Shown here: piece by piece, positions 1-46,159 of the stretch
How positions within the stretch are numbered: position 1 is the stretch's first letter
How the letters are laid out: each line of letters opens with the position of its first letter
NCBI RefSeq assembly: GCF_016433145.1
Contig: NC_058131.1
Location: 574,676,082-574,740,081 of the forward strand
Direction of reading: 5' to 3'
Source: Gracilinanus agilis
Lineage: Eukaryota
DNA length: 64,000 nucleotides
The notes under the pieces: model-generated
Databases searched by the model: none
What the model saw: only the letters and a program-made list of their open reading frames with translations
What the model was told of the DNA's origin: nothing
Made by a program: the position numbers and the translations under genes

Positions 1-783
1 TAAGAGCGAAGGATGTTCTTTATTAATTACAAACATCTCTTTTGAACGTTAGAAAAGTTGATATCAGTTAGTTACAATATGTGTTATAACAATTTCTCAC
101 ATAGAATCTAAGGATGAATGAAATTGTGGCCGTTAAATATTCTAGATTCCTTGATGGTGGATGTTCAAAACTATAAAGTCATAAGATTCTTATGATTGGC
201 ATGCTCTGTGGCAGATTATAATTTTGGGAAGTCATCCTTCCAGTTATCTGTTATCCATAATAGTTAGAGAAAGGGAATCTTTAAGAAGCCTTTCTTTTTC
301 TCCTATCTGACCCATAGTGGTATGGGACCCTTCTTTATGCACTTGGCTTTTCCACTCAAGAACTTCAAAATTAGCCTGACTAGGATAATTTATTGTATTT
401 CTTCCCCTTGTGGTTCCTGATCCCATTAACTGAAAGGGTGAGCAAAAGAGCTCCCTTTTCTATGTATTGAAGAGCTTGAGCATTATGATTACCGTTGAAT
501 GTGAGCTGCCAGTGACACTAGTCTAGGAGTTAGAATTTGCTAGGGAAAAAGTAAAGCCTCAAACCATTACACCCTGACACATTCCTTCTTTCTTTTTTAT
601 TGAACTCAACATTTACAGCTCTGTACCTTTCTAGAACTTATAACACTAAAAAATGGCTTCTATGCAGAGCAGTAGTTCTCCCTTCCTTGACCCCCTGATA
701 CTGTTTGTATCAGCAGCAATTAAAATTTGATTTACTAATTCCTTATTGCTGCTTCTCCAGCTTCTTATTTTTCATCTTCATGG

Positions 784-850
784 AGCTCTAGTGCTGTAAT
801 AGCAGAGCAACACCTCCTCAGCCATCTGGCCCAGGAAAAGAGGCACCTAA
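784..850 (+). pseudogene. CSNK1G1: Degenerate homologue of the CSNK1G1 short-isoform (gamma-1S) alternative terminal exon
   Basis: 784-813 reads SSSAVIAEQH and 818-850 reads SAIWPRKRGT* in a shifted frame. The human 1S tail as recalled is SLRTVTAEHYDVNNSAIWHRGRGT*. The expected acceptor AG is GG (782-783). Confidence 0.55.
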
Positions 851-1648
851 ACAAAATCATCAAAAACAACACAAATGAGCAAGATCAGAATAGAATGAGA
901 TGTGAAAAAACAGGAAAAGGCCAAGAGAAGAGGGCCAGGAATGCCAGCCTTTTCGTTTCAAAGATGAAAGCAGAGTCCAGGGATGTTTGAGTTGAAGGCT
1001 CTCCCTTTGCTAGGAAAGGATCCTCCTCCCTTTGCTTTCTAGAAGGAAGTAATCCACATTAAAGTGAGTAGTTAAAACTTTTTCCAAATCCCGACAGAGG
1101 CTATTAGCTAAGGCAATTATAAAATCATTGGAGACTTTATCGCATCCTTCCATATTCATTGGAAAGATGCCTGCATTTGATTAGGAAAAGAGTCTTGTAC
1201 ATTCATGATTTATGTCCATATTGCCTTAATAAAACATCACCTAGAAGTTGCTTTTGAATGTTATGCCCTATTCTGAAGAGAAGGCATTGTGTTGATATCC
1301 TCAGTGCCAGAAATTACTTTTATTTTTTTCTGGATAGATTTTTAATCAATGAAATCATTTGTAAATATATTGCAATTGCTACTCAAATACTACTAATACA
1401 GAAACTTCAGAGCTTTTTTTTTCTTTTGGGAGTAGACAGTCATGTATTGACTGGTTTTGCTGAAATAAATATAGCCAAACTAACTTTTCCTCAGTGCTTT
1501 GCAGGGATTCTTAATTAAAAGAAAAAATTAAAACAAAATCCACAATTACAGGAAGAATACAACTAATTAACTTGATTTTTGTCATTGCTTGCCATGGCTT
1601 CACCTTTCCTTCTATATATTGCTCTCGTGCTTCCTAATGCCCTAGCAG

Positions 1649-7453: not shown

Positions 7454-7560
7454 GTGGTGAGCTCAACAAATGGAGAGCTGAACGTTGATGACCCAACAGG
7501 GGCACACTCCAATGCACCCATCACAGCGCATGCCGAGGTGGAGGTAGTGGAGGAAGCTAA
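7454..7560 (+). CDS. CSNK1G1: CSNK1G1 penultimate constitutive coding exon ([13 protein letters not shown]...EVVEEA+aa)
   Basis: Acceptor ttttgtttcag|, donor AA|gtacgt, 107 nt, phase 0 to 2; peptide matches CK1-gamma-1 as recalled. Confidence 0.95.
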
Positions 7561-12010: not shown

Positions 12011-13713
12011 TATGTTTAGATGTGAACCCACATTATGTACACTACATGTAACATAAGATACAGACATTCTTTGCTTCCCATAAATATAATATATATGCCA
12101 TGGGATGATTTATCCCTTGCAAAGGAACACACTCATTTCATTATATTTTGGTAAACTTGTACATTAATTTTATGTATGTGTGTGTGCGTGTGTGTGTATG
12201 TTTTGCATATGTGATATAGAATTTTCCATAACAGACTATATTGGTATCAAAACCTTAGCTTATAGAGATAGAAAAGTTGAAAGTTCCATCAAAATATTCA
12301 CTATGAAAGAACTACTTTTCCTATAAACATTGTCAAGAATAAAGGAATAGATGATCCTTAGAATCAGCTTAGCTATTTGAGATATCTATAGATCTTCTCA
12401 AATTTTTTTTCTAGCTTTTATCCAGACCTTTTTGAATTTCATATGCTAATCACTACTACTCTCATCATAGTGGCCAATCTATCTTACTTAAGAAAATTAT
12501 AGGATGCCACTATGTCCTAACTTTTGAACTTCTGTAGGAAGATTTTTAGAGTAACCATTATTCCAAGATCATTCTGTGTAATTGTTTAGATCACCTTATA
12601 TATTTCCTTAATGAATACAGCTGTGGTATCACTTGCCATAAAAGCTTATCTTGGGCAAAGTGTGTGTTTTGCTTTGTGTTGAGAGTCTAATAATGCCTTG
12701 CTGCTTTGGCAGTTTTGAGACTTTAGAGCTTTACCAACATGTATTTAATTTTGGAATACTCACTCATGTTATAGTATGGAATTGAAAGAAACAACATTGC
12801 TTTGTCTTTCCTTTATCATTTTACAAAAATGAAAGACTGATTTCTCCCTTTCCTCAAGACACATGATATAGATATTGATTTGATGATTTTTATATGGGAG
12901 TAACTTTAGTTCAGGGTAAAATAAGGAATCTTGGTGATCTATTGACTTGTATGGAGCAGACATGGGTCCCTTTTTTACAGAAAATAAGTGAGTTTGGTTC
13001 TTAGATCCTTCCCTAGTGAAGATTATTGCGATTATGCTTATAGTAGGCTTAATCAAAATTAAGGTCCATTATCATCCCTTTTTGAGTCAGTCAGCTGTTA
13101 CTGACTTGAAGCCAGTTCATCTGGAATCTTTTTCATATGCTTAGTAGAAGAAACACTAACTCACAGCTTCTCCCACACACTCATCAAGAGCTAACAGAAC
13201 AGTGAGATTCCAATTTTTCATCTCAGAGTAACCATAAAGTTAACCTGGTAGCATTTTGTAAGGTCTAAGTGTCCTTGTTTTCTTGTTGGGAGCCAGAAAC
13301 AATGTTTAGACTGCTTTAGTTTCCTCTCAGCAACATCATTTGGTCTATCCTCAATAGTCCAGATTCCTTTCTATTTCCTAACAGCAGGCTTTCCTTAAAA
13401 GCTCATCCCCACCTCCCCTTTTTGCCCCATCCTTAACTGAAATTTTATTGTTTCAGTGCTTGTGCCAGGTACTAACTGTCCGTTCTCTTTGAAAACATCC
13501 ACTCAGTAACCTCTGCCTCCCCCTCACTTGCTTTCTCTTCCTTCTCCTCAAGGAGGAGTTAGGCTAAAATCAGATGTGCATTGCATGTTTGCATGGCTCA
13601 CAGTAACTCACTTCCATCTCACCTCTGTGAACTAATCTTTCTTTCTCTCTTTCTCTCTTTTTCTCTCTCTCTCTTTTCCTTTCTGTGTTTTTCTCTTTAC
13701 ACACTCTCTGTAG

Positions 13714-13737
13714 CTGCCTGAAAATGCTCAACTTGTG
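13714..13737 (+). CDS. CSNK1G1: Candidate 24-nt microexon of CSNK1G1 (EEAK-CCC becomes EEAN-CLKMLNLW-CCC)
   Basis: Branch-like CTAAT at 13632-13636, then an AG-free pyrimidine tract of ~75 nt, TAG|ctgcctgaaaatgctcaacttgtg|GTGAGT. It is frame-preserving (phase 2-2) with no stop and resembles the recalled CSNK1G3 NCQKVLNMW insert. Confidence 0.72.
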
Positions 13738-14467
13738 GTGAGTCCCTCTCTCCAGTCTACATGCAAGGGGAGCGGACCAGACTAGACTGGGATTGGCAAA
13801 ACCAAACAAAAGTGACTTAGGAAAACTGAATTGCTTCAAAATGCCACCCTGTGCCATAATTATCCAATCTGGGGAATTATATCCACAAGGTGGGGATGGG
13901 GGTAAACAAAGAAGGCCTAAACCCAGAAATTAGGCTGTCCTGTGTATGCATTCAAAACCCATCCCTCTAAAAAATTTTTCATTCCTTTTTTGGCTTAGTA
14001 TATTATATTGCCCAGTCCCTCCCCCCAATTAACATGACCAGATAATGTCAGAAGGAGATGGACAGAGTTGGGGAGTCATAACTGCTACGTCTCCCCCCCA
14101 AGGGATTATTCCTCACAACAAAGGAATTCAAAATTATAAGGATGATGCCTTACTTAAATGATCTCAAATGATGTCATGGTCTCTAGCAGAGAAATGAACT
14201 TCTTTGAAAAAAAATCTGTAGCTTCTGTTGTTTGTCAACAGGTTCCACTCTCTAGGAGTTTTTGTGAGTTCTCTGACTTAATTGAGAAGAGTATGACCCA
14301 AGTATTGATTCTCTGAGGGATACCTACGAGGGGAGGAAAGGACAATTTTGTTTAATGACTCTGTCTCTATAAGATCACAGAACATTTAGTCAAGAAGTAA
14401 TTCAGGTGGAGTAAGCTGCTAAAATACTGAACCCTAGCCTTTTTGTGCTAAGCAAAATATCCTAGAA

Positions 14468-18627: not shown

Positions 18628-18682
18628 GTGCTGCTGTTTCTTTAAGAGGAAAAGGAAGAAGACTGCCCAGCGCCACAAGTGA
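18628..18682 (+). CDS. CSNK1G1: CSNK1G1 last coding exon (g+CCCFFKRKRKKTAQRHK*), carrying the palmitoylation Cys cluster and basic tail
   Basis: Acceptor tgtcctttgtgctccag|; the first base completes AAG (Lys); TGA at 18680-18682. Confidence 0.96.
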
Positions 18683-23329: not shown

Positions 23330-25160
23330 CAGTTACTATTTGACCCTCAAGGGGATCATTTCATACCCAAGGTGAAAAATGACCATGCCTAGGAGTCCAG
23401 AGAGTTGGAATGATTGCCTTGGTCTCCCTTTCTGCCATCAGTGTGTGCTTTAAAAACAAGGAAACAAACAAAAGGCACTGCCTTGTAGGAAGCTGCTTTT
23501 CCACAGAGAAACTAGGGCTCAGCCACCTGCACACAAGCCTTATGGATGGCTCCTAGGTCCCAGCCCCTACTAGGGTCTTCACCACGGAAGGATCAGTTAG
23601 GAATCTGAAGTGATTACTTTGGTTTTTATTTTATTGTTGCTTTTGTTTAAAGGAAAGGAAAATGTGGCCCTTTTGAGGGTACTTGAAGTTTTGAGCAGTG
23701 TTTTAACCACAAAGTAGGAATTTCAATGTACTTGACTAATTAAGCAGTCTTAAAACATTGGTATGTTTTCCTTAACTCCATTTCCAGGTAACTGAGTGCA
23801 AAAGAACTGGTTTCTTCGTTGTACTCAAAACAGTAGATAGATTTAAATTCCACTGAATATAGACAGTGGAAAGCATATTTTCTCCAATCCACCAGGAAAT
23901 CCACTCCAGTATTTGTGTATAGATCAGCCTATGGAGGAAAAAGTGAATGTGTATTTCATGTATTTCTAGTTTGATTTACCAAACTCATTGTTATAAAGAA
24001 ACCTCAGTTATCTAAACAAGATGTTTTTTCTTTCACTCCAGTAAAATTTCTGATGCCATCGTTATCTGCAAGGTGTCACATTAGAGAGGTGTCCCTGGTA
24101 GTATATGGGGGTGATCTGTAATCACCTTACTAACAAATAATTACCAGGAATGTGGTGATCTTGACAGTTGGCTTTCTTCTCTCCCACCCCTCCACTGTGC
24201 ACGTGACTTTTTCTTTTTCAATGTTCCTCTTCTTGAGCTCTAGACCAAATCCCAGGTCATCTCTTGCACAGAAAGCCTTTAAAAGGTTTGTCAGTCTGTT
24301 AGGAATGTCTCAGGAAAATGAGCCATTTCTCGGGGGGCAGGGAGGGGGGGGTAGGGGATGGAATTATATACTGACATGTGTATGTATATATGGTTTTCCT
24401 AACCCTACCTGCTTACAGCTCAAGCTGCTCTAAACTGTGTTCCTGAGTATTCTTGGAAGAAAACAAATGACAAATTAGTGCGGTGTGCTGATCCTGGTAA
24501 AGATTCTCATTTGTTGAAAGAAAGAAGAGTAACAGTAGAAAATATGTAGATGATACCAAAAAATATTCTAACCCCCAATGGAAAATAATATTAAGTCACA
24601 AATTCCCACTGGATATATTGCAAGCTATAATTTATTATATTATTATTTTGTCTATTTCTTTAACCTTTGCCCTTGTACTTTCAAGAGGGGATGTTGGGGA
24701 TATCGATTGCAACTTTTTTTTTTACTGTAAAATGTATAAATCAGCTGTGGAAATCATTTTTTAAATTGATATTGCGTGGATGTGTCTGATTCTTGTTAAA
24801 TGCCTTTTTGAGTTTTTTATCTTTTATTTGAAATATGTAATGCAATATTTTATTCATAAAACCCTGGCACTGGTCTCAAAGCTCAGCTGTGAAAATGAAA
24901 CTTGTAGTATTTTTTAACATGAATGTCAATTTAAAGTGTATTTGAAATGGTTCTACCGGGATAAGGGCTTATATACCACTGGGAAAAGCTCCTCTGAGGG
25001 GGGAGTGGCTTTCTTTGGAGAACATGGGTCCTGATATCTTTGTCTCTGAATTGCCCATTTCCTAGGGCAGCAGGAGAAACACAAATGTGATCTTAAAAGT
25101 ACACCTCTTCTCCACTTTTGGGAGGGGAAGGGACTCAGTTTGCACCCTTTTTGTATGTAA

Positions 25161-36547: not shown

Positions 36548-37098
36548 CTAGAAGGGGGAAACACAGGCTGAGTAGGAGGCTCCTCGCTTGGTAGTGTGGC
36601 TGCTTACACGGCTCTCCCCTGGTCCTCTTCTGGCCCTCCCTCGGCTCCATGCGGTTCCCTTTCTAGGTGGGAGGGAAGGCTGGGAGCCCCGGCACTGCCC
36701 AGTCGCTGTGCTGCCCGTTTGCCGGGCCAGATGTGGGGCCGGCCAGGAAGTGACCCATTACAGAGCAGCGCTGAGCCAAGCTTCTTCGTCCATCCTTAAG
36801 GATGACATTCACTCGCTGGCTCTCAAGTTGGAACCAGGCGGAGACGGCAGCCCAAGAACAGCCATCGGAGGCATCTGTTGGATCCCCACGTGGGAGCCTC
36901 AGGAGGGGGTGGGCTCCTGAGGCCCATCTGCTGCATTCATCCAGATCAGCTTGGTTCTAGGAGCTGCTCCCTTGGGTTGTCTCAACTATTGGGGTCATGC
37001 CATTAGAGCAGGGACAGGGAGGTCCCCCGTCCCAGGTGGGTGCCAAGATTTGACTTCATAATTACTGCCATTTTCTCAGCCCTGGACATTTTACTTAC

Positions 37099-37166
37099 CT
37101 AGAGAAGGGCTTTGCAGGTAGGGATCCCTGTGGAATTTCAGGACTGGTCTGTGGGGTTGGTGAGCA
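37099..37166 (-). CDS. SNX22: SNX22 exon 6 (AHQPHRPVLKFHRDPYLQSPSL)
   Basis: Acceptor ttttccctctag|, donor G|gtaagt; 68 nt. Confidence 0.9.
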
Positions 37167-37560
37167 CTAGAGGGAAAAGAGGTTGGTCAGATCTTGCTAC
37201 TTACATAAAGCCCCAATTGTGCCTGGGATGGAGGATGCCTTGAATGGAAAGAGGGCCACCAAGAACAGAAATGCAAGTTGAACGGGATCTAGGACACCAA
37301 ACAAGAATGCTGGGGACTTTGCATTCTTATACAGTCTCTGGACAATTTGGGGGGAGATATAAAGAATTGCCTTTGTGACTGGGCAAATCACTTTGGGTCT
37401 CGATCTGAGGAAGGTCCTTTCAAGCCCTAAATCTGACACTTAAGACAACCTGGTACAGGTTTCCTTTGGAAGAAATGCCCTCATTGGGACCACAAGGGGG
37501 CAGCAGGCACCTGAATCCCTGGCCAGGGAAGCAGGACAAGGGGTAAGTTCTTCAATTTGC

Positions 37561-37593
37561 CTGCTGTTGCTGGGCAGAAACTTGCCCAGTGAG
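37561..37593 (-). CDS. SNX22: SNX22 exon 5 (SLGKFLPSNS), 33 nt, with an apparent GC donor
   Basis: Acceptor ccctttcag|; phase 2-2 is needed to join exons 4 and 6; the donor reads AG|GCAAAT. Confidence 0.75.
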
Positions 37594-38043
37594 CTGAAAG
37601 GGAGAAGAGGCACATCAATGACTGGTGCCAGCCCCTGTGAGTAGCACCTGAACCAGAAAAAGTCCCTGCAGCTCTCCAGGGAGGCGAGGGTGAGGGTAGG
37701 GGTGGAGACAACTTGGACTGTCCCAACCTCTAGGGCCCTATTAGTTAAGCTGCTGGCCAACTTAAGAGTGAATGGGAGGGAATTTTAAGGCTAAGAGCCC
37801 ACCTGGAAAAATATTAAGAGTACTGGGATAAGAATCAGTTATGTGATGGAAGAAGTGTTAGAGCCTTAAGGAAGGGCAGCAAACCCAGGTACAAAGACAA
37901 AACAGATTTGCGCTGGTGCCTACATGCTGGATTTAGGTACCTCCAGGCCCAGATGTCCACTGATGTCCTTAAGGTTTATCTGAAGACATAACCTGAGGAC
38001 CCTTCTCATCCCACCCTCCTTTAAGCTTCCACAATCAACTCAC

Positions 38044-38138
38044 TCCATGTCGCTAGCTTTGGAATCTGAAGGGAAATGTCGAAGCTTCAAGAATTCCAGC
38101 ACTTCCTTGGGGACTTCCTGATTGAGATACAGGACACC
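38044..38138 (-). CDS. SNX22: SNX22 exon 4 (GVLYLNQEVPKEVLEFLKLRHFPSDSKASDM)
   Basis: Acceptor ctccccag|, donor GA|gtgagt; 95 nt. Confidence 0.93.
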
Positions 38139-38613
38139 CTGGGGAGCACAGTCAATACACACTTATTAAATGCTTACTATGATATGCATTGGAAATAAAA
38201 AGACAAGAGTGAAACAGTTCCTGCCTTCAAGGAGCCTACATTCTAATGAGAGAGACAGATGTATATACACAATACTTCTGTAGAGAACAGAAACATAAGG
38301 TGGTTATGGGATGGGCCCCCACAACCAAGGTGACAAGGTGTCAGAAAAGACTTCATGTAGCAGGTTTTTGAAGTGAATCATGAAGGAAAGTGGGATCCCA
38401 CCAGAGGTGAGGAAGGGGTGGATTCCAGGCATGGTTCAGGGATACTGAGGGCCAGCCACATAAACACAGATACACAGGCAATCCTGTGTTACCCACTTGA
38501 TATACATCATCATCATCACAACCCTGTGGTGAAAGGATTTCTACAAAAAGATTCTCTACTGAGATCTGAAGTTAGTCCCTAGACAAAAAGAAGCCCAATT
38601 CTGCCCTTCTCAC

Positions 38614-38718
38614 CTGGATATAAGCCTCTAACCCCTGTCGTCGTTGCTCCAGAACCTTGTGCCTCCAGTTAGGTACCCGTTTGGGAGGAAAGTCAGGCAC
38701 TTTGCAAGACTTCTTAAT
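38614..38718 (-). CDS. SNX22: SNX22 exon 3 ([35 protein letters not shown])
   Basis: Acceptor ttggacag|, donor CAG|gtgaga; 105 nt. Confidence 0.93.
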
Positions 38719-39171
38719 CTGTCCAAAGCCATAAGAAACCTGCTTTAGAACTCCCAGTTCTACCTAGACCTGGGGCCCTAGATAGAGACTCATCCTCCCA
38801 GAACTTTACCCTAACTCTGCCTCTTCTGGGTAGGTTCCTGTAGAGGAGAGGTAAATTCAGACTTCTTAAGCTAAATAAATACCCTGAGAGACTACTTCTA
38901 ACGGTAGGTAGGGAAGACCCTAAAAAGCCATAGACTCCAGTGTACCTTGACTTGCCCCCAGACTGGAATCCTCCCACTGTGCCCACCACTCCTTTCCCCT
39001 CTTCACCCCGGGAGAGACTGGTGTTTTGAAGGAAAGGTGGGTGTCAGACCAGTAGCGCCGGATACCAGCTCGACCGAGGGCAGAAGTTTTGCCCCAGGTA
39101 GAAGAGAAGGTAGGGCTCTCCCGCCATTCTGTTCTCTGTATCCCGGGGAACAGGCCCAACCTACTTCTCAC

Positions 39172-39255
39172 CTGCTTGTGCAGGGCATGGAATTCACTGT
39201 AGCGCCGATAAATGGTGTGCTTTCTCCCGTTGCAGAGGACCTCCACCCTGAACAC
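39172..39255 (-). CDS. SNX22: SNX22 exon 2 (VFRVEVLCNGRKHTIYRRYSEFHALHKQ)
   Basis: Acceptor cttttag|, donor CAG|gtgaga; 84 nt; PX RRYSEF motif. Confidence 0.95.
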
Positions 39256-39599
39256 CTAAAAGGCGTTGAAGGGGGGAGGCAGTAAGGAATGAGAACGAGT
39301 GAGCCACCCAAGTCCGGGCAAATTCAGGGCAGAAGAAAGAATGTAAAGGAATAGCCAGGGAGAACTAGAGGGTCGCCACTGCTAGTCTCTTCTCTTTCTA
39401 CCCCAGCGCGGGTGGGAGGGGACTCAATTCCAACCCTCTCCCAGTAGCCAATTTCTGCAGTCGGGCATCGCCCCTCACAAAGGCCGTTTCAGAGCTGCCT
39501 CAGCTCTAGGGGGATCCCCGGGACACCTAACAGAGCTGCTCACCTCCCATTCCTCTCCCTCTTCTAGCAAGTTAGGGTGGGTGGGGGAGTGAAGGAGTT

Positions 39600-40450
39600 A
39601 GAAGCAATTCCACTCCTCTGCCCCGCAGGGCAAAGTTCATCAATTACAAGGTTCAAAGACCACCCCCGCACCCCCTCCAACCTCCATTTCCCCACTCCGC
39701 TGGGATGTAATTAAGTGCCGCTAACCCCGCTGGGGGCGGCGGACGCGGAAATATCTGCCTTCCGTCCTCCAGCCCCGGCCTCTCAATTAACATCCAGGAG
39801 AAAGATGCATGGGGGATGAAGTCCCCCAAACTCGAGTGGCGGAGGGAGAGAAACTTCGGAATGAAACTAGTCCGAGCGTCTCTTCACAGCTCCTATTCAG
39901 GTCTCTCCAGCCCCGTGCCCAGGGTTACCTTCCGTCCCCCAATAGCGAACGGCGCCTCCCCGACGCTTTGAAATCCTCCAGGCAAGGAACTCCAGGACTC
40001 GTTTCCCGGAGGGAGCGACGGCCCCAGCACTCACCATATGTCCTTTCTCCAGGTTCCTCTCCGACTCCGCAGCCTCCGGCCCCACAGAAGGAATGTGTAC
40101 TTGTAGCATCCCCAACCCCATCCCACTTCCAGCCCCGGCGCTCTGCGACTGCAGGATCCAGGGCTCCGGCTCCGGGGCGCTCCCTCGAGGGTTAGACAGA
40201 GCGACTGGCCCCGCCTCTCCCCCCCCCCCCGCCCCGCCAGGCCCGCCCCACCTGGGCCCCGCCCCCGCTCTTCTCCCGGGTGCGGAGGTTCCCCTCCTCC
40301 TCCCGTCCGAAGAAAGTAGGGCGGGCAGGCTAAGGCTACCTGGGGCGGAGGTCAGCTTTTGGGGTGCCCAGCTCCAGAGAATTCTGGGAGCACAGGGAAG
40401 CCTACGCGAGGGTTCCAATCTTTTCGACCAGCTTCTCTTTGCTGGGCTGG
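39600..40450 (-). promoter_or_regulatory. SNX22 CpG island/promoter with clustered GC boxes (copy 1; copy 2 at ~44578-45428)
   Basis: High CpG density; several CCCGCCCC/GGGGCGG motifs at 40210-40350. Confidence 0.75.
40035..40109 (-). CDS. SNX22: SNX22 exon 1 (MLQVHIPSVGPEAAESERNLEKGHM)
   Basis: ATG at 40109-40107; donor ATG|gtgagt; 25 codons; resembles the recalled human MLEVHIPSVGPEA. Confidence 0.92.
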
Positions 40451-41020
40451 AAGGACGCTGGAACGTAGACGGAATGACTTCCCTCTAGATGCTTATGTTC
40501 TGGTGGAGCGCCCAGACCGTTTAGAAGAATAACTCGGACTGAGCAGTCAGGGCTTTGCCCAGTGTGCTGAAATTTAGAGAAGGCTGACCCCATCTCCAGG
40601 TCCCCAGAGATGGAAGAAATAATGGAGTATAAAGGGACTGAGCCTACAGAGGGAGAGTATCTGAATTTATATCCTAAGTTATTCGCTATGACCTTTTCTT
40701 GTTGTGGTAGAGTCCTTCATTCGTGCCCAATTCTTCCGGACCCCAAGGACCACGGCACGCCAGACCCTTCTATCCTCCACCATCTCCCGAAGTCTGGCCG
40801 AGTTCATGTGACGTTTCCATGACTATGCATCCATCTCATCCATTTCTCCTTTTGTCTTCAGTCTTTCCTAGCATCAGCGTCTTTTCCAAGGAGTCCTGTC
40901 TTCTCACTGACCTTGGCCAAAGGATTTAAGCTTCAGCTTCAGTATTTGACCTTCCAGGTTAGTTAATCACTCATCTTGTCCGAGCTTCAAAATGAGTCAC
41001 CTCCTACCCAACCAGAATCT

Positions 41021-41764
41021 NNNNNNNNNNNNNNNNNNNNNNNNNNNNNNNNNNNNNNNNNNNNNNNNNNNNNNNNNNNNNNNNNNNNNNNNNNNNNNNN
41101 NNNNNNNNNNNNNNNNNNNNNNNNNNNNNNNNNNNNNNNNNNNNNNNNNNNNNNNNNNNNNNNNNNNNNNNNNNNNNNNNNNNNNNNNNNNNNNNNNNNN
41201 NNNNNNNNNNNNNNNNNNNNNNNNNNNNNNNNNNNNNNNNNNNNNNNNNNNNNNNNNNNNNNNNNNNNNNNNNNNNNNNNNNNNNNNNNNNNNNNNNNNN
41301 NNNNNNNNNNNNNNNNNNNNNNNNNNNNNNNNNNNNNNNNNNNNNNNNNNNNNNNNNNNNNNNNNNNNNNNNNNNNNNNNNNNNNNNNNNNNNNNNNNNN
41401 NNNNNNNNNNNNNNNNNNNNNNNNNNNNNNNNNNNNNNNNNNNNNNNNNNNNNNNNNNNNNNNNNNNNNNNNNNNNNNNNNNNNNNNNNNNNNNNNNNNN
41501 NNNNNNNNNNNNNNNNNNNNNNNNNNNNNNNNNNNNNNNNNNNNNNNNNNNNNNNNNNNNNNNNNNNNNNNNNNNNNNNNNNNNNNNNNNNNNNNNNNNN
41601 NNNNNNNNNNNNNNNNNNNNNNNNNNNNNNNNNNNNNNNNNNNNNNNNNNNNNNNNNNNNNNNNNNNNNNNNNNNNNNNNNNNNNNNNNNNNNNNNNNNN
41701 NNNNNNNNNNNNNNNNNNNNNNNNNNNNNNNNNNNNNNNNNNNNNNNNNNNNNNNNNNNNNNNN
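41021..41764. other. Assembly gap (744 N) between the two SNX22 duplicate units
   Basis: N run. Confidence 0.99.
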
Positions 41765-42076
41765 CGTCCATCCTTAAGGATGACATTCACTCGCTGGCTC
41801 TCAAGTTGGAACCAGGCGGAGACGGCAGCCCAAGAACAGCCATCGGAGGCATCTGTTGGATCCCCACGTGGGAGCCTCGGGAGGGGGTGGGCTCCTGAGG
41901 CCCATCTGCTGCATTCATCCAGATCAGCTTGGTTCTAGGAGCTGCTCCCTTGGGTTGTCTCAACTATTGGGGTCATGCCATTAGAGCAGGGACAGGGAGG
42001 TCCCCCGTCCCAGGTGGGTGCCAAGATTTGACTTCATAATTACTGCCATTTTCTCAGCCCTGGACATTTTACTTAC

Positions 42077-42144
42077 CTAGAGAAGGGCTTTGCAGGTAGG
42101 GATCCCTGTGGAATTTCAGGACTGGTCTGTGGGGTTGGTGAGCA
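42077..42144 (-). CDS. SNX22: SNX22 exon 6, copy 2 (possibly an assembly artefact)
   Basis: Copy of 37099-37166 at +4978. Confidence 0.55.
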
Positions 42145-42538
42145 CTAGAGGGAAAAGAGGTTGGTCAGATCTTGCTACTTACATAAAGCCCCAATTGTGC
42201 CTGGGATGGAGGATGCCTTGAATGGAAAGAGGGCCACCAAGAACAGAAATGCAAGTTGAACGGGATCTAGGACACCAAACAAGAATGCTGGGGACTTTGC
42301 ATTCTTATACAGTCTCTGGACAATTTGGGGGGAGATATAAAGAATTGCCTTTGTGACTGGGCAAATCACTTTGGGTCTCGATCTGAGGAAGGTCCTTTCA
42401 AGCCCTAAATCTGACACTTAAGACAACCTGGTACAGGTTTCCTTTGGAAGAAATGCCCTCATTGGGACCACAAGGGGGCAGCAGGCACCTGAATCCCTGG
42501 CCAGGGAAGCAGGACAAGGGGTAAGTTCTTCAATTTGC

Positions 42539-42571
42539 CTGCTGTTGCTGGGCAGAAACTTGCCCAGTGAG
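42539..42571 (-). CDS. SNX22: SNX22 exon 5, copy 2 (possibly an assembly artefact)
   Basis: Copy of 37561-37593 at +4978, with the same GC donor. Confidence 0.5.
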
Positions 42572-43021
42572 CTGAAAGGGAGAAGAGGCACATCAATGAC
42601 TGGTGCCAGCCCCTGTGAGTAGCACCTGAACCAGAAAAAGTCCCTGCAGCTCTCCAGGGAGGCGAGGGTGAGGGTAGGGGTGGAGACAACTTGGACTGTC
42701 CCAACCTCTAGGGCCCTATTAGTTAAGCTGCTGGCCAACTTAAGAGTGAATGGGAGGGAATTTTAAGGCTAAGAGCCCACCTGGAAAAATATTAAGAGTA
42801 CTGGGATAAGAATCAGTTATGTGATGGAAGAAGTGTTAGAGCCTTAAGGAAGGGCAGCAAACCCAGGTACAAAGACAAAACAGATTTGCGCTGGTGCCTA
42901 CATGCTGGATTTAGGTACCTCCAGGCCCAGATGTCCACTGATGTCCTTAAGGTTTATCTGAAGACATAACCTGAGGACCCTTCTCATCCCACCCTCCTTT
43001 AAGCTTCCACAATCAACTCAC

Positions 43022-43116
43022 TCCATGTCGCTAGCTTTGGAATCTGAAGGGAAATGTCGAAGCTTCAAGAATTCCAGCACTTCCTTGGGGACTTCCTGAT
43101 TGAGATACAGGACACC
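43022..43116 (-). CDS. SNX22: SNX22 exon 4, copy 2 (possibly an assembly artefact)
   Basis: Copy of 38044-38138 at +4978. Confidence 0.55.
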
Positions 43117-43591
43117 CTGGGGAGCACAGTCAATACACACTTATTAAATGCTTACTATGATATGCATTGGAAATAAAAAGACAAGAGTGAAACAGTTCCT
43201 GCCTTCAAGGAGCCTACATTCTAATGAGAGAGACAGATGTATATACACAATACTTCTGTAGAGAACAGAAACATAAGGTGGTTATGGGATGGGCCCCCAC
43301 AACCAAGGTGACAAGGTGTCAGAAAAGACTTCATGTAGCAGGTTTTTGAAGTGAATCATGAAGGAAAGTGGGATCCCACCAGAGGTGAGGAAGGGGTGGA
43401 TTCCAGGCATGGTTCAGGGATACTGAGGGCCAGCCACATAAACACAGATACACAGGCAATCCTGTGTTACCCACTTGATATACATCATCATCATCACAAC
43501 CCTGTGGTGAAAGGATTTCTACAAAAAGATTCTCTACTGAGATCTGAAGTTAGTCCCTAGACAAAAAGAAGCCCAATTCTGCCCTTCTCAC

Positions 43592-43696
43592 CTGGATATA
43601 AGCCTCTAACCCCTGTCGTCGTTGCTCCAGAACCTTGTGCCTCCAGTTAGGTACCCGTTTGGGAGGAAAGTCAGGCACTTTGCAAGACTTCTTAAT
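43592..43696 (-). CDS. SNX22: SNX22 exon 3, copy 2 (possibly an assembly artefact)
   Basis: Copy of 38614-38718 at +4978. Confidence 0.55.
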
Positions 43697-44149
43697 CTGT
43701 CCAAAGCCATAAGAAACCTGCTTTAGAACTCCCAGTTCTACCTAGACCTGGGGCCCTAGATAGAGACTCATCCTCCCAGAACTTTACCCTAACTCTGCCT
43801 CTTCTGGGTAGGTTCCTGTAGAGGAGAGGTAAATTCAGACTTCTTAAGCTAAATAAATACCCTGAGAGACTACTTCTAACGGTAGGTAGGGAAGACCCTA
43901 AAAAGCCATAGACTCCAGTGTACCTTGACTTGCCCCCAGACTGGAATCCTCCCACTGTGCCCACCACTCCTTTCCCCTCTTCACCCCGGGAGAGACTGGT
44001 GTTTTGAAGGAAAGGTGGGTGTCAGACCAGTAGCGCCGGATACCAGCTCGACCGAGGGCTGAAGTTTTGCCCCAGGTAGAAGAGAAGGTAGGGCTCTCCC
44101 GCCATTCTGTTCTCTGTATCCCGGGGAACAGGCCCAACCTACTTCTCAC

Positions 44150-44233
44150 CTGCTTGTGCAGGGCATGGAATTCACTGTAGCGCCGATAAATGGTGTGCTT
44201 TCTCCCGTTGCAGAGGACCTCCACCCTGAACAC
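44150..44233 (-). CDS. SNX22: SNX22 exon 2, copy 2 (possibly an assembly artefact)
   Basis: Copy of 39172-39255 at +4978. Confidence 0.55.
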
Positions 44234-45012
44234 CTAAAAGGCGTTGAAGGGGGGAGGCAGTAAGGAATGAGAACGAGTGAGCCACCCAAGTCCGGGCAAA
44301 TTCAGGGCAGAAGAAAGAATGTAAAGGAATAGCCAGGGAGAACTAGAGGGTCGCCACTGCTAGTCTCTTCTCTTTCTACCCCAGCGCGGGTGGGAGGGGA
44401 CTCAATTCCAACCCTCTCCCAGTAGCCAATTTCTGCAGTCGGGCATCGCCCCTCACAAAGGCCGTTTCAGAGCTGCCTCAGCTCTAGGGGGATCCCCGGG
44501 ACACCTAACAGAGCTGCTCACCTCCCATTCCTCTCCCTCTTCTAGCAAGTTAGGGTGGGTGGGGGAGTGAAGGAGTTAGAAGCAATTCCACTCCTCTGCC
44601 CCGCAGGGCAAAGTTCATCAATTACAAGGTTCAAAGACCACCCCCGCACCCCCTCCAACCTCCATTTCCCCACTCCGCTGGGATGTAATTAAGTGCCGCT
44701 AACCCCGCTGGGGGCGGCGGACGCGGAAATATCTGCCTTCCGTCCTCCAGCCCCGGCCTCTCAATTAACATCCAGGAGAAAGATGCATGGGGGATGAAGT
44801 CCCCCAAACTCGAGTGGCGGAGGGAGAGAAACTTCGGAATGAAACTAGTCCGAGCGTCTCTTCACAGCTCCTATTCAGGTCTCTCCAGCCCCGTGCCCAG
44901 GGTTACCTTCCGTCCCCCAATAGCGAACGGCGCCTCCCCGACGCTTTGAAATCCTCCAGGCAAGGAACTCCAGGACTCGTTTCCCGGAGGGAGCGACGGC
45001 CCCAGCACTCAC

Positions 45013-45087
45013 CATATGTCCTTTCTCCAGGTTCCTCTCCGACTCCGCAGCCTCCGGCCCCACAGAAGGAATGTGTACTTGTAGCAT
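45013..45087 (-). CDS. SNX22: SNX22 exon 1, copy 2 (possibly an assembly artefact)
   Basis: Copy of 40035-40109 at +4978. Exon 7 of this copy would fall at 41410-41525, inside the gap. Confidence 0.55.
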
Positions 45088-46159
45088 CCCCAACCCCATC
45101 CCACTTCCAGCCCCGGCGCTCTGCGACTGCAGGATCCAGGGCTCCGGCTCCGGGGCGCTCCCTCGAGGGTTAGACAGAGCGACTGGCCCCGCCTCTCCCC
45201 CCCCCCCCGCCCCGCCAGGCCCGCCCCACCTGGGCCCCGCCCCCGCTCTTCTCCCGGGTGCGGAGGTTCCCCTCCTCCTCCCGTCCGAAGAAAGTAGGGC
45301 GGGCAGGCTAAGGCTACCTGGGGCGGAGGTCAGCTTTTGGGGTGCCCAGCTCCAGAGAATTCTGGGAGCACAGGGAAGCCTACGCGAGGGTTCCAATCTT
45401 TTCGACCAGCTTCTCTTTGCTGGGCTGGAAGGACGCTGGAACGTAGACGGAATGACTTCCCTCTAGATGCTTATGTTCTGGTGGAGCGCCCAGACCGTTT
45501 AGAAGAATAACTCGGACTGAGCAGTCAGGGCTTTGCCCAGTGTGCTGAAATTTAGAGAAGGCTGACCCCATCTCCAGGCCCCCAGAGATGGAAGAAATAA
45601 TGGAGTATAAAGGGACTGAGCCTACAGAGGGAGAGTATCTGAATTTATATCCTAAGTTATTCGCTATGACCTTTTCTTGTTGTGGTAGAGTCCTTCATTC
45701 GTGCCCAATTCTTCCGGACCCCAAGGACCACGGCACGCCAGACCCTTCTATCCTCCACCATCTCCCGAAGTCTGGCCGAGTTCATGTGACGTTTCCATGA
45801 CTATGCATCCATCTCATCCATTTCTCCTTTTGTCTTCAGTCTTTCCTAGCATCAGCGTCTTTTCCAAGGAGTCCTGTCTTCTCACTGACCTTGGCCAAAG
45901 GATTTAAGCTTCAGCTTCAGTATTTGACCTTCCAGGTTAGTTAATCACTCATCTTGTCCGAGCTTCAAAATGAGTCACCTCCTACCCAACCAGAATCTAT
46001 GTCAGATTCTATAAACTGAACACCTAGGTAACAATCATTAGGAAGGTACTGAATGTCAAATGGTTCCAGTCAATAGTTGTACCCCAGAGACTTGTGAGGA
46101 TGGGTGCCCTGGGGATCCTTAACTGCCTCCCCCACTTTGCCTTAAAAATTGATTTTAGG

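What the first reader, a model, noticed from the sequence alone, without database searches (positions are those of the whole stretch)
13582..13743. Hidden 24-nt microexon that rewrites the residues next to the CK1-gamma-1 palmitoylation cysteines
Seen, and missed by the ORF track: branch-like CTAAT (13632-13636), ~75 nt of AG-free pyrimidines, TAG, a 24-nt exon at 13714-13737, and a consensus GTGAGT donor. It fits exactly between the phase-2 ends of exons 7454-7560 and 18628-18682, turning EEAK-CCCFF into EEAN-CLKMLNLW-CCCFF. That removes a Lys and adds a fourth Cys and a Trp beside the CCC cluster. Established: this Cys cluster is palmitoylated and anchors CK1-gamma to membranes, where it acts on LRP5/6 in Wnt signalling. 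Recalled: paralogue CSNK1G3 has a similar optional NCQKVLNMW insert, implying an origin before the vertebrate paralogue split. Two RBFOX motifs (TGCATG at 13582-13587 and 13590-13595) lie just upstream of the branch point, a position usually repressive. Inference: a tissue-regulated switch controlling kinase lipidation or localisation.
Basis: partly seen in the sequence, partly recalled or inferred. Interest (0 to 1): 0.72.

Follow-up and report, generated by a model that had tools for sequence, protein, structure and literature searches.

The report
Known conserved CSNK1G1 tail microexon
The 24-base segment is a genuine, very old alternative microexon of the kinase gene CSNK1G1 that inserts eight residues next to its lipid-anchor cysteines, but it is already annotated in many vertebrates and listed in microexon catalogues, so it is not a discovery.

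Summary
A 24-nt exon (13714-13737) has a TAG acceptor, a GTGAGT donor, a 75-nt pyrimidine tract that is 92% pyrimidine, and a 108-nt AG-free zone. It fits the phase-2 ends of exons 7454-7560 and 18628-18682, turning EEAK-CCCFF into EEAN-CLKMLNLW-CCCFF.

It is not a chance pseudo-exon.
- The same exon with the same splice sites sits in whale, two bird and three teleost CSNK1G1 loci. It is 22-24/24 nt identical, and all 8 third-codon positions are identical.
- It lies inside a conserved intronic island of about 230 nt.
- Public protein records carry exactly NCLKMLNLW in mouse (XP_017168762.1), bats, shrew, marsupials, turtle and birds. Teleosts and axolotl carry NCVKMLNLW.
- CSNK1G3 has the paralogous NCQKVLNMW insert, including in a mouse cDNA product. 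One CSNK1G2-like fish locus has none.

A 2025 zebrafish study deleted a conserved, developmentally rising "csnk1g1" microexon. I could not check that it is this exon.

The two UGCAUG motifs are real and conserved in amniotes, but not at that position in teleosts. Any effect on palmitoylation or localisation remains inference. No RNA reads from this genome could be examined.

The parts
7454..7560 (+). Penultimate constitutive coding exon of CSNK1G1 ([35 protein letters not shown] plus AA, ending in phase 2), with a GTACGT donor.
   Evidence: Pfam CK1gamma_C at E=3e-10. tblastn with CK1-gamma-1 proteins gives 100% identity.
13582..13595 (+). Two UGCAUG (RBFOX-type) motifs 8 nt apart, 131 and 123 nt upstream of the microexon.
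   Evidence: The identical TGCATGTTTGCATGG is present in gray whale, mousebird and barn owl. It is not conserved at that position in catfish, loach or milkfish.
13612..13636 (+). Conserved branch-point region TTCCATCTCACCTCTGTGAACTAAT, with the candidate branch A inside CTAAT.
   Evidence: Alignment A2: CACC, the following TG and the final A are invariant from mammal to teleost. Use as a branch point is inferred.
13637..13711 (+). CU-rich polypyrimidine tract (92% pyrimidine) inside a 108-nt AG-exclusion zone. It is expanded in this genome relative to whale, birds and fish, and is rich in UCUCU/CUCUCU (PTBP-type) motifs.
   Evidence: PTBP binding is inferred from motif content only.
13714..13737 (+). 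24-nt frame-preserving cassette microexon. Inclusion replaces Lys with Asn-Cys-Leu-Lys-Met-Leu-Asn-Leu-Trp immediately before the CCC cluster.
   Evidence: The exon is 22-24/24 nt identical in seven CSNK1G1 loci, and 8/8 third-codon positions are conserved. The peptide is present in 15 of 120 CK1-gamma-1 cluster representatives and in further cluster members.
13738..13789 (+). Consensus donor GTGAGT followed by a deeply conserved downstream intronic element (CCCTCTCTCCAGTCYACAT ... GGGGAGCGGACCAGNCTAGACTG).
   Evidence: Alignments A1 and A2: window versus bird identity is 0.94-0.97 for 13727-13779, and most of the element is alignable to loach and milkfish.
18628..18682 (+). Last coding exon (G + CCCFFKRKRKKTAQRHK + stop), carrying the palmitoylation Cys cluster and the basic stretch.

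Best explanation
Window 13714-13737 is a genuine, alternatively included 24-nt cassette microexon in the last intron of CSNK1G1 (casein kinase 1 gamma-1).

What is shown:
- Skipping gives the tail ...EEAK-CCCFFKRKRKK.... Inclusion gives ...EEAN-CLKMLNLW-CCCFFKRKRKK....
- The exon, its splice sites and about 230 nt of flanking intron have been held nearly invariant since before the teleost/tetrapod split.
- A paralogous exon of the same length, phase and position exists in CSNK1G3.
- Both tail forms are annotated side by side in many species.

What is inferred on regulation: inclusion is regulated in the manner of conserved neural or developmental microexons. The architecture fits repression in non-neural cells and activation as neurons mature. 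It has a distant branch point, a long CU-rich tract and a CU-rich stretch just after the donor (PTBP-type sites on both sides), a conserved downstream G-run element, and, in amniotes, two upstream UGCAUG sites.

What is inferred on the protein: the insert replaces the acidic segment next to the acylated cysteines with a hydrophobic, Trp-containing interfacial segment and adds a fourth Cys. This would raise intrinsic membrane affinity and could change the extent, kinetics or site of S-acylation, and hence where the kinase sits.

The confidence given (0.9) is for the shown part, a real, conserved, already annotated alternative microexon. I put regulated neural or developmental inclusion at about 0.7 and the membrane-anchor effect at about 0.4.
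For: Sequence anatomy.

Uniqueness: it is the best of only two in-frame open candidates in the intron.

DNA conservation:
- The exon is present with AG/GTGAGT in whale, two birds and three teleosts.
- It is 22-24/24 nt identical, with 8/8 third positions conserved against 14-22/35 in the neighbouring exon.
- The flanking island is conserved.

Protein records:
- NCLKMLNLW is identical in mouse XP_017168762.1, Pipistrellus, Myotis, Sorex, Dromiciops, Trachemys and six bird species.
- NCVKMLNLW is found in teleosts and axolotl.
- 37 cluster representatives carry the skipped form.

Paralogues: a CSNK1G3 exon of the same length and phase exists.

Regulation: a zebrafish 'csnk1g1' microexon was chosen as conserved with mouse and changing during brain development. 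Its PSI rises from 0.005 to 0.39 between 12 and 72 hpf.

Protein function: the Cys cluster is required for CK1G localisation (PMC9254030). For the 13 residues ending at FF, the summed interfacial free energy is -5.6 kcal/mol with charge +1 when the exon is included, against +4.5 kcal/mol and charge -2 when it is skipped.
Against: I could not confirm that the zebrafish 'csnk1g1-ME' is this particular exon. The table with coordinates is not among the held supplements. The only support is indirect: several isoform pairs differ in length by exactly 8 residues.

No UGC motif lies between the pyrimidine tract and the AG, so the canonical SRRM4 layout is only half met.

The UGCAUG pair is not conserved in teleosts.

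csnk1g1 is not among the genes for which the zebrafish deletion study names phenotypes (abstract; Results).

The effect on acylation or localisation is entirely inferred.
Confidence: 0.9

Rival explanations
1. It is a chance pseudo-exon: good-looking splice sites in an intron that are never used.
For: From sequence alone, short AG...GT segments are common. There are 20 AG...GTRAGT combinations in this intron.
Against: The exon and its flanks are conserved from mammals to teleosts, with all third-codon positions fixed. The exact peptide is present in annotated isoforms of many vertebrates, and its CSNK1G3 paralogue is present in a mouse cDNA product.
Confidence: 0.02
2. It is a real alternative exon but not a neural or developmental switch: it is included at a low, broadly similar level in most tissues, or is regulated mainly in muscle and heart through the upstream RBFOX sites and PTBP.
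For: The canonical SRRM4 UGC element is absent upstream of the AG. Upstream UGCAUG sites usually repress (established RNA-map knowledge). Zebrafish PSI reaches only 0.39 in whole embryos.
Against: The zebrafish study picked its csnk1g1 microexon because it changes during mouse brain development and is conserved in fish. Its PSI rises steadily while the brain forms. The architecture resembles PTBP-repressed neural microexons.
Confidence: 0.2
3. The conserved island is kept mainly for an RNA secondary structure that presents or hides the exon. One candidate is pairing between the upstream UGCAUGU and the downstream ACAUGCA. Another is a hairpin just after the donor.
For: RNAalifold draws a hairpin CCCUCUCUCC/GGGGAGCGG after the donor and a helix enclosing both splice sites. 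The upstream TTGCATGT is complementary to the downstream ACATGCAA in the window.
Against: The covariation term is only -0.53 kcal/mol, and most predicted pairs are invariant. Single-sequence folds are no more stable than shuffles, with z from +0.2 to +1.5. The downstream CATGCA is lost in whale and fish without compensating changes.
Confidence: 0.05

Closest known systems
CSNK1G3 C-terminal microexon (insert NCQKVLNMW)
   Same: It is 24 nt, with the same phase-2 junctions and the same position directly before CCCFFKR. It starts CTGCC and ends TGTG|GTGAGT, has a CU-rich acceptor, and has an upstream UGCAUG at -147. Six of the 8 internal residues are identical.
   Different: It is in a different paralogue. 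Leu becomes Gln, Met becomes Val and Leu becomes Met. The flanking intron is not alignable beyond short motifs.
Vertebrate-conserved neural microexon programme (3-27 nt, SRRM4/SRRM3-dependent; Irimia 2014, Gonatopoulos-Pournatzis 2018, from my own knowledge; MicroExonator set as used in PMC12626420)
   Same: The length is a multiple of 3 and at most 27 nt. Exon and flanking-intron conservation is extreme. A UC-rich tract lies upstream. A csnk1g1 microexon is in the conserved mouse/zebrafish set, with PSI rising during development.
   Different: No UGC lies between the tract and the AG. SRRM4 dependence and neural enrichment were not tested here.
c-src N1 exon (18-nt neural microexon repressed by PTB on both sides, with a downstream enhancer holding G-runs and UGCAUG; from my own knowledge)
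   Same: It is a tiny exon with CU-rich elements on both sides, a distant branch point, and a conserved downstream element containing a G-run.
   Different: Here the UGCAUG motifs are upstream rather than downstream. No factor binding was tested.

Membership tests
CSNK1G1 (CK1 gamma-1) C-terminal tail | CK1gamma_C domain (PF12605) in the preceding exon. | tested here: met
   E=3e-10, 41.3 bits against a cut-off of 21.2.
CSNK1G1 (CK1 gamma-1) C-terminal tail | Terminal CCCFF cluster followed by a basic stretch, with the gamma-1-type ending KRKRKKTAQRHK. | tested here: met
   The tail is identical to those of 24 CK1-gamma-1 cluster representatives.
Annotated CSNK1G1 microexon isoform (NCLKMLNLW) | The same peptide at the same junction in independent public records. 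| tested here: met
   mouse, bats, shrew, marsupials, turtle and birds are identical. Teleosts and axolotl differ by one residue.
Conserved neural/developmental microexon class | Length of at most 27-30 nt and frame-preserving. | tested here: met
   24 nt, open in phase.
Conserved neural/developmental microexon class | Strong conservation of the exon and flanking introns. | tested here: met
Conserved neural/developmental microexon class | Neural or developmentally regulated inclusion. | tested here: inconclusive
   Literature only: zebrafish csnk1g1 microexon PSI rises from 0.005 to 0.39. Identity with this exon was not verified. No reads from this genome were available.
Conserved neural/developmental microexon class | UGC motif plus UC repeats just upstream of the 3' splice site (SRRM4 enhancer). 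| tested here: inconclusive
   UC repeats are present. There is no UGC in the last 100 nt of intron; the first UGC is inside the exon.
RBFOX-regulated exon | Conserved (U)GCAUG within about 300 nt of the exon. | tested here: met
   The pair is conserved in mammals and birds. In teleosts there is only a single GCAUG, at other positions.
RBFOX-regulated exon | RBFOX binding and RBFOX-dependent change in inclusion. | not testable with these tools
   Needs CLIP data, knock-down or a minigene assay.
S-acylated membrane anchor modified by the insert | The added Cys is acylated, or the insert changes acylation or localisation. | not testable with these tools
   Only a hydrophobicity calculation was possible.

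The most novel reading that the evidence does not exclude
The microexon is one half of an ancient regulated module shared by CSNK1G1 and CSNK1G3 and older than their split. It was absent from the one CSNK1G2-like locus checked. The module converts the acidic juxta-cysteine segment into a Trp/Leu-rich interfacial segment with a fourth acylatable Cys. In maturing neurons this would retune the stoichiometry or kinetics of S-acylation and the membrane domain where CK1-gamma acts, for example on LRP6 or CERT. This functional link has not been studied in any paper I could find.
Probability: 0.3. Interest if true: 0.5.

Novelty: already known. Interest (0 to 1): 0.25.

Why it matters
The exon's existence and conservation are already in public annotation, so the finding adds nothing new there. 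It is, however, a clean example of what an ORF track misses. What remains open is function. The eight residues sit directly against the cysteines that anchor CK1-gamma to membranes, and the coding and flanking sequence has been frozen since before the teleost/tetrapod split. Even so, csnk1g1 is not among the genes with named phenotypes in the zebrafish deletion study. A simple biochemical comparison of the two tails would show whether splicing tunes lipid anchoring of this kinase.

Tried and rejected
That stretch was only read, aligned and folded.

2. Joined spliced model. Only exon 7454-7558 was searched, by reference. The later protein search used a database protein, not window sequence. The 8-residue exon is too short to search alone. 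Scripts translated the 24 nt with its three junction bases only.

3. Literature.
- Full-text searches for CSNK1G1 or CSNK1G3 with 'microexon' gave one relevant paper.
- The MicroExonator supplements held no gene name, and a gene ID I recalled from memory gave no hit.
- The table giving coordinates of the zebrafish csnk1g1 microexon is not among the held files.

4. RNA structure. The idea of long-range pairing or a donor-proximal hairpin was rejected. There is no covariation and the fold z-scores are positive.

5. Chance pseudo-exon: rejected.

6. Loci that could not be fetched: Trachemys (gene range too long), and Sorex, Pipistrellus and a butterfly (not on record). Pre-vertebrate origin was therefore not tested.

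7. Unnamed Logan and ENA fragments identical to exon e1 were not fetched, because their organism is unknown and could be human.

Full report
**Observation.**
- Exon 7454-7560 encodes ...[11 protein letters not shown] and ends with AA (phase 2), followed by a GTACGT donor.
- The last coding exon, 18628-18682, starts with G and then reads CCCFFKRKRKKTAQRHK-stop.
- Between them, CTAAT lies at 13632-13636.
- 13637-13711 is 92% pyrimidine.
- The AG-free zone upstream of the acceptor AG at 13712-13713 is 108 nt.
- The 24 nt at 13714-13737 read C-TGC-CTG-AAA-ATG-CTC-AAC-TTG-TG and are followed by GTGAGT.
- With the junction bases, Lys is replaced by Asn-Cys-Leu-Lys-Met-Leu-Asn-Leu-Trp.
- TGCATG occurs at 13582 and 13590, and there is no other GCATG within 13300-14100.

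A scan of the whole 11-kb intron for AG...(3-51 nt)...GTRAGT found 20 combinations. Only two are in-frame and open, and this one has the best pyrimidine tract.

**Gene context.** Exon 7454-7558 matches Pfam CK1gamma_C. tblastn with database CK1-gamma-1 proteins places three terminal coding exons in the window: about 1646-1765, 7454-7560 and 18628-18682. PPIB exon 1 lies at about 27.2 kb on the + strand and SNX22-like exons lie on the - strand. This is the gene order I recall for the CSNK1G1 neighbourhood.

**Is the exon used elsewhere?**

Exon 7454-7558 alone, by reference, was searched against 1.84 billion cluster representatives. A database protein from that search, P0016 residues 270-332, was then used for the word search.

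*CSNK1G1 records.* Among the 120 listed CK1-gamma-1 cluster representatives, 37 end ...EEAK/DEAK-CCCFF and 15 carry the insert.
- NCLKMLNLW is letter-for-letter identical in mouse XP_017168762.1, Pipistrellus, two Myotis species, Sorex, the marsupial Dromiciops, the turtle Trachemys and six bird species.
- Teleosts have NCVKMLNLW: Misgurnus, Tachysurus, Salmo, Anguilla, Chanos, Carassius and Sinocyclocheilus. So does the axolotl.
- Included and skipped forms are annotated side by side in the same species. Examples are Dromiciops X4/X6 against X7/X9, and Numenius X1 against X2.

NCQKVLNMW precedes CCCFFKRRKRKTIQRHK in a mouse cDNA product (BAC27983.1). The same 90% cluster also holds bird and coelacanth entries.

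**DNA conservation.** I fetched CSNK1G1 loci from gray whale, speckled mousebird, barn owl, a catfish, a loach and milkfish.
- In all of them a 24-nt exon with the same acceptor (...CTGTAG) and donor (GTGAGT) lies in the last intron.
- It is 24/24 identical to the window in both birds, 23/24 in whale and catfish, and 22/24 in loach and milkfish.
- All 8 third-codon positions are identical, against 14-22 of 35 in the neighbouring exon. This points to constraint on the RNA as well as the peptide.
- Alignments A1 and A2 show a conserved island at window coordinates of about 13573-13800, in otherwise unalignable intron.

The island contains, in order:
1. TGCATGTTTGCATGG, identical in mammals and birds.
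2. The branch-point region TCATCTCACCTCTGTGAACTAAT, whose core is conserved to teleosts.
3. The CU tract, which is expanded in this genome.
4. ACACTCTCTGTAG, then the exon.
5. GTGAGTCCCTCTCTCCAGTCCACAT...GGGGAGCGGACCAGNCTAGACTG, which is largely conserved to loach and milkfish.

In teleosts the UGCAUG pair is replaced by a single GCAUG at -71, -75 or -280.

**Paralogues.** A CSNK1G3 locus from the bird Leptosomus has a 24-nt exon in the same phase: CTGCCAGAAAGTGTTGAACATGTG|GTGAGT. It has a CU-rich acceptor and a UGCAUG at -147. A CSNK1G2-like locus from the fish Dallia has a last intron of under 260 nt with nothing resembling the exon. An origin before the gamma-1/gamma-3 split is therefore well supported. 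Absence from gamma-2 rests on one locus, and pre-vertebrate origin was not testable.

**Regulation.**
- Calhoun et al. 2025 (PMC12626420) took microexons that change during mouse brain development and are conserved in zebrafish. They deleted 45 of them, including 'csnk1g1-ME'.
- Their source data give PSI of 0.005, 0.12, 0.17, 0.26 and 0.39 at 12, 24, 36, 48 and 72 hpf.
- csnk1g1 is not among the genes for which they name phenotypes.
- I could not see their coordinate table. Identity with this exon is therefore likely but not shown. The only support is indirect: several isoform pairs differ in length by exactly 8 residues.
- From the anatomy I infer PTBP-type repression, with CU-rich motifs on both sides and a distant branch point, and activation through the conserved downstream G-run element.
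- The amniote UGCAUG pair is a candidate RBFOX site. By the established RBFOX RNA map its upstream position is usually repressive.
- The SRRM4-type UGC upstream of the AG is absent.
- The RNA-structure explanation was tested and dropped. The alifold covariation term is -0.53 kcal/mol and the fold z-scores run from +0.2 to +1.5.

**Protein consequence (inference).**
- The three cysteines, and palmitoylation, are needed for CK1G localisation. The C-terminus is needed for membrane localisation and Wnt signalling of Xenopus CK1-gamma (PMC9254030 and its citation of Davidson 2005).
- I compared the 13 residues ending at the FF that follows the cluster. The insert changes them from [13 protein letters not shown] (Wimley-White interfacial sum +4.5 kcal/mol, net charge -2) to CLKMLNLWCCCFF (-5.6 kcal/mol, net charge +1).
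- That predicts higher intrinsic membrane affinity and one more acylatable Cys. Nothing here tests it.

**Limits.** There is therefore no expression evidence from this genome itself. Unnamed database fragments whose organism could be human were not fetched.

**Verdict.** It is already annotated and catalogued, so novelty is 'already known'. Only its biochemical role is open.

Noticed in passing
window 24859-24945 (+): An open frame reads ...KPWHWSQSSAVKMKLVVFFNMNVNLKCI-stop. It lies 6 kb downstream of the canonical CSNK1G1 stop and 2.3 kb upstream of PPIB exon 1. It matches the alternative C-termini (...EEAK-CIMFHKPWHWSQSSAVKMKFVVFLNMNVNFKCI) of annotated primate, lemur and squirrel CSNK1G1 isoforms P0208, P0214, P0216 and P0217, a tail without the CCC cluster. 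No AG acceptor is obvious directly upstream in this genome.
   Followed up: partly
window 36787-40488 versus 41765-45466: There is a near-identical direct duplication with an offset of 4978 nt. The second copy starts at the first base after the N run 41021-41764. SNX22-like ORFs occur twice with identical translations. It looks like an assembly duplication at a gap rather than biology.
   Followed up: partly
window 13637-13665: The CU-repeat part of the polypyrimidine tract is about 22-30 nt longer here than in whale and birds. This pushes the UGCAUG pair from about -100 or -90 out to -131 and -123.
   Followed up: no
window 601-1400: Translating all three + frames showed nothing resembling the alternative CSNK1G1 tail found in database isoforms. 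That tail maps at 24.86 kb instead.
   Followed up: partly
P0225 (Apodemus speciosus CK1 gamma-1, 474 aa): This protein ends ...EEAN-VLLFL. That is the last exon read in the wrong frame after an Asn codon, and it looks like an annotation pipeline mishandling the microexon.
   Followed up: no
P0278 (MCV4627140.1): A 75-aa 'casein kinase I, partial [Escherichia coli]' record on a 228-bp contig clusters with mammalian CK1-gamma-2 tails. It is evidently eukaryotic contamination in a bacterial assembly.
   Followed up: no
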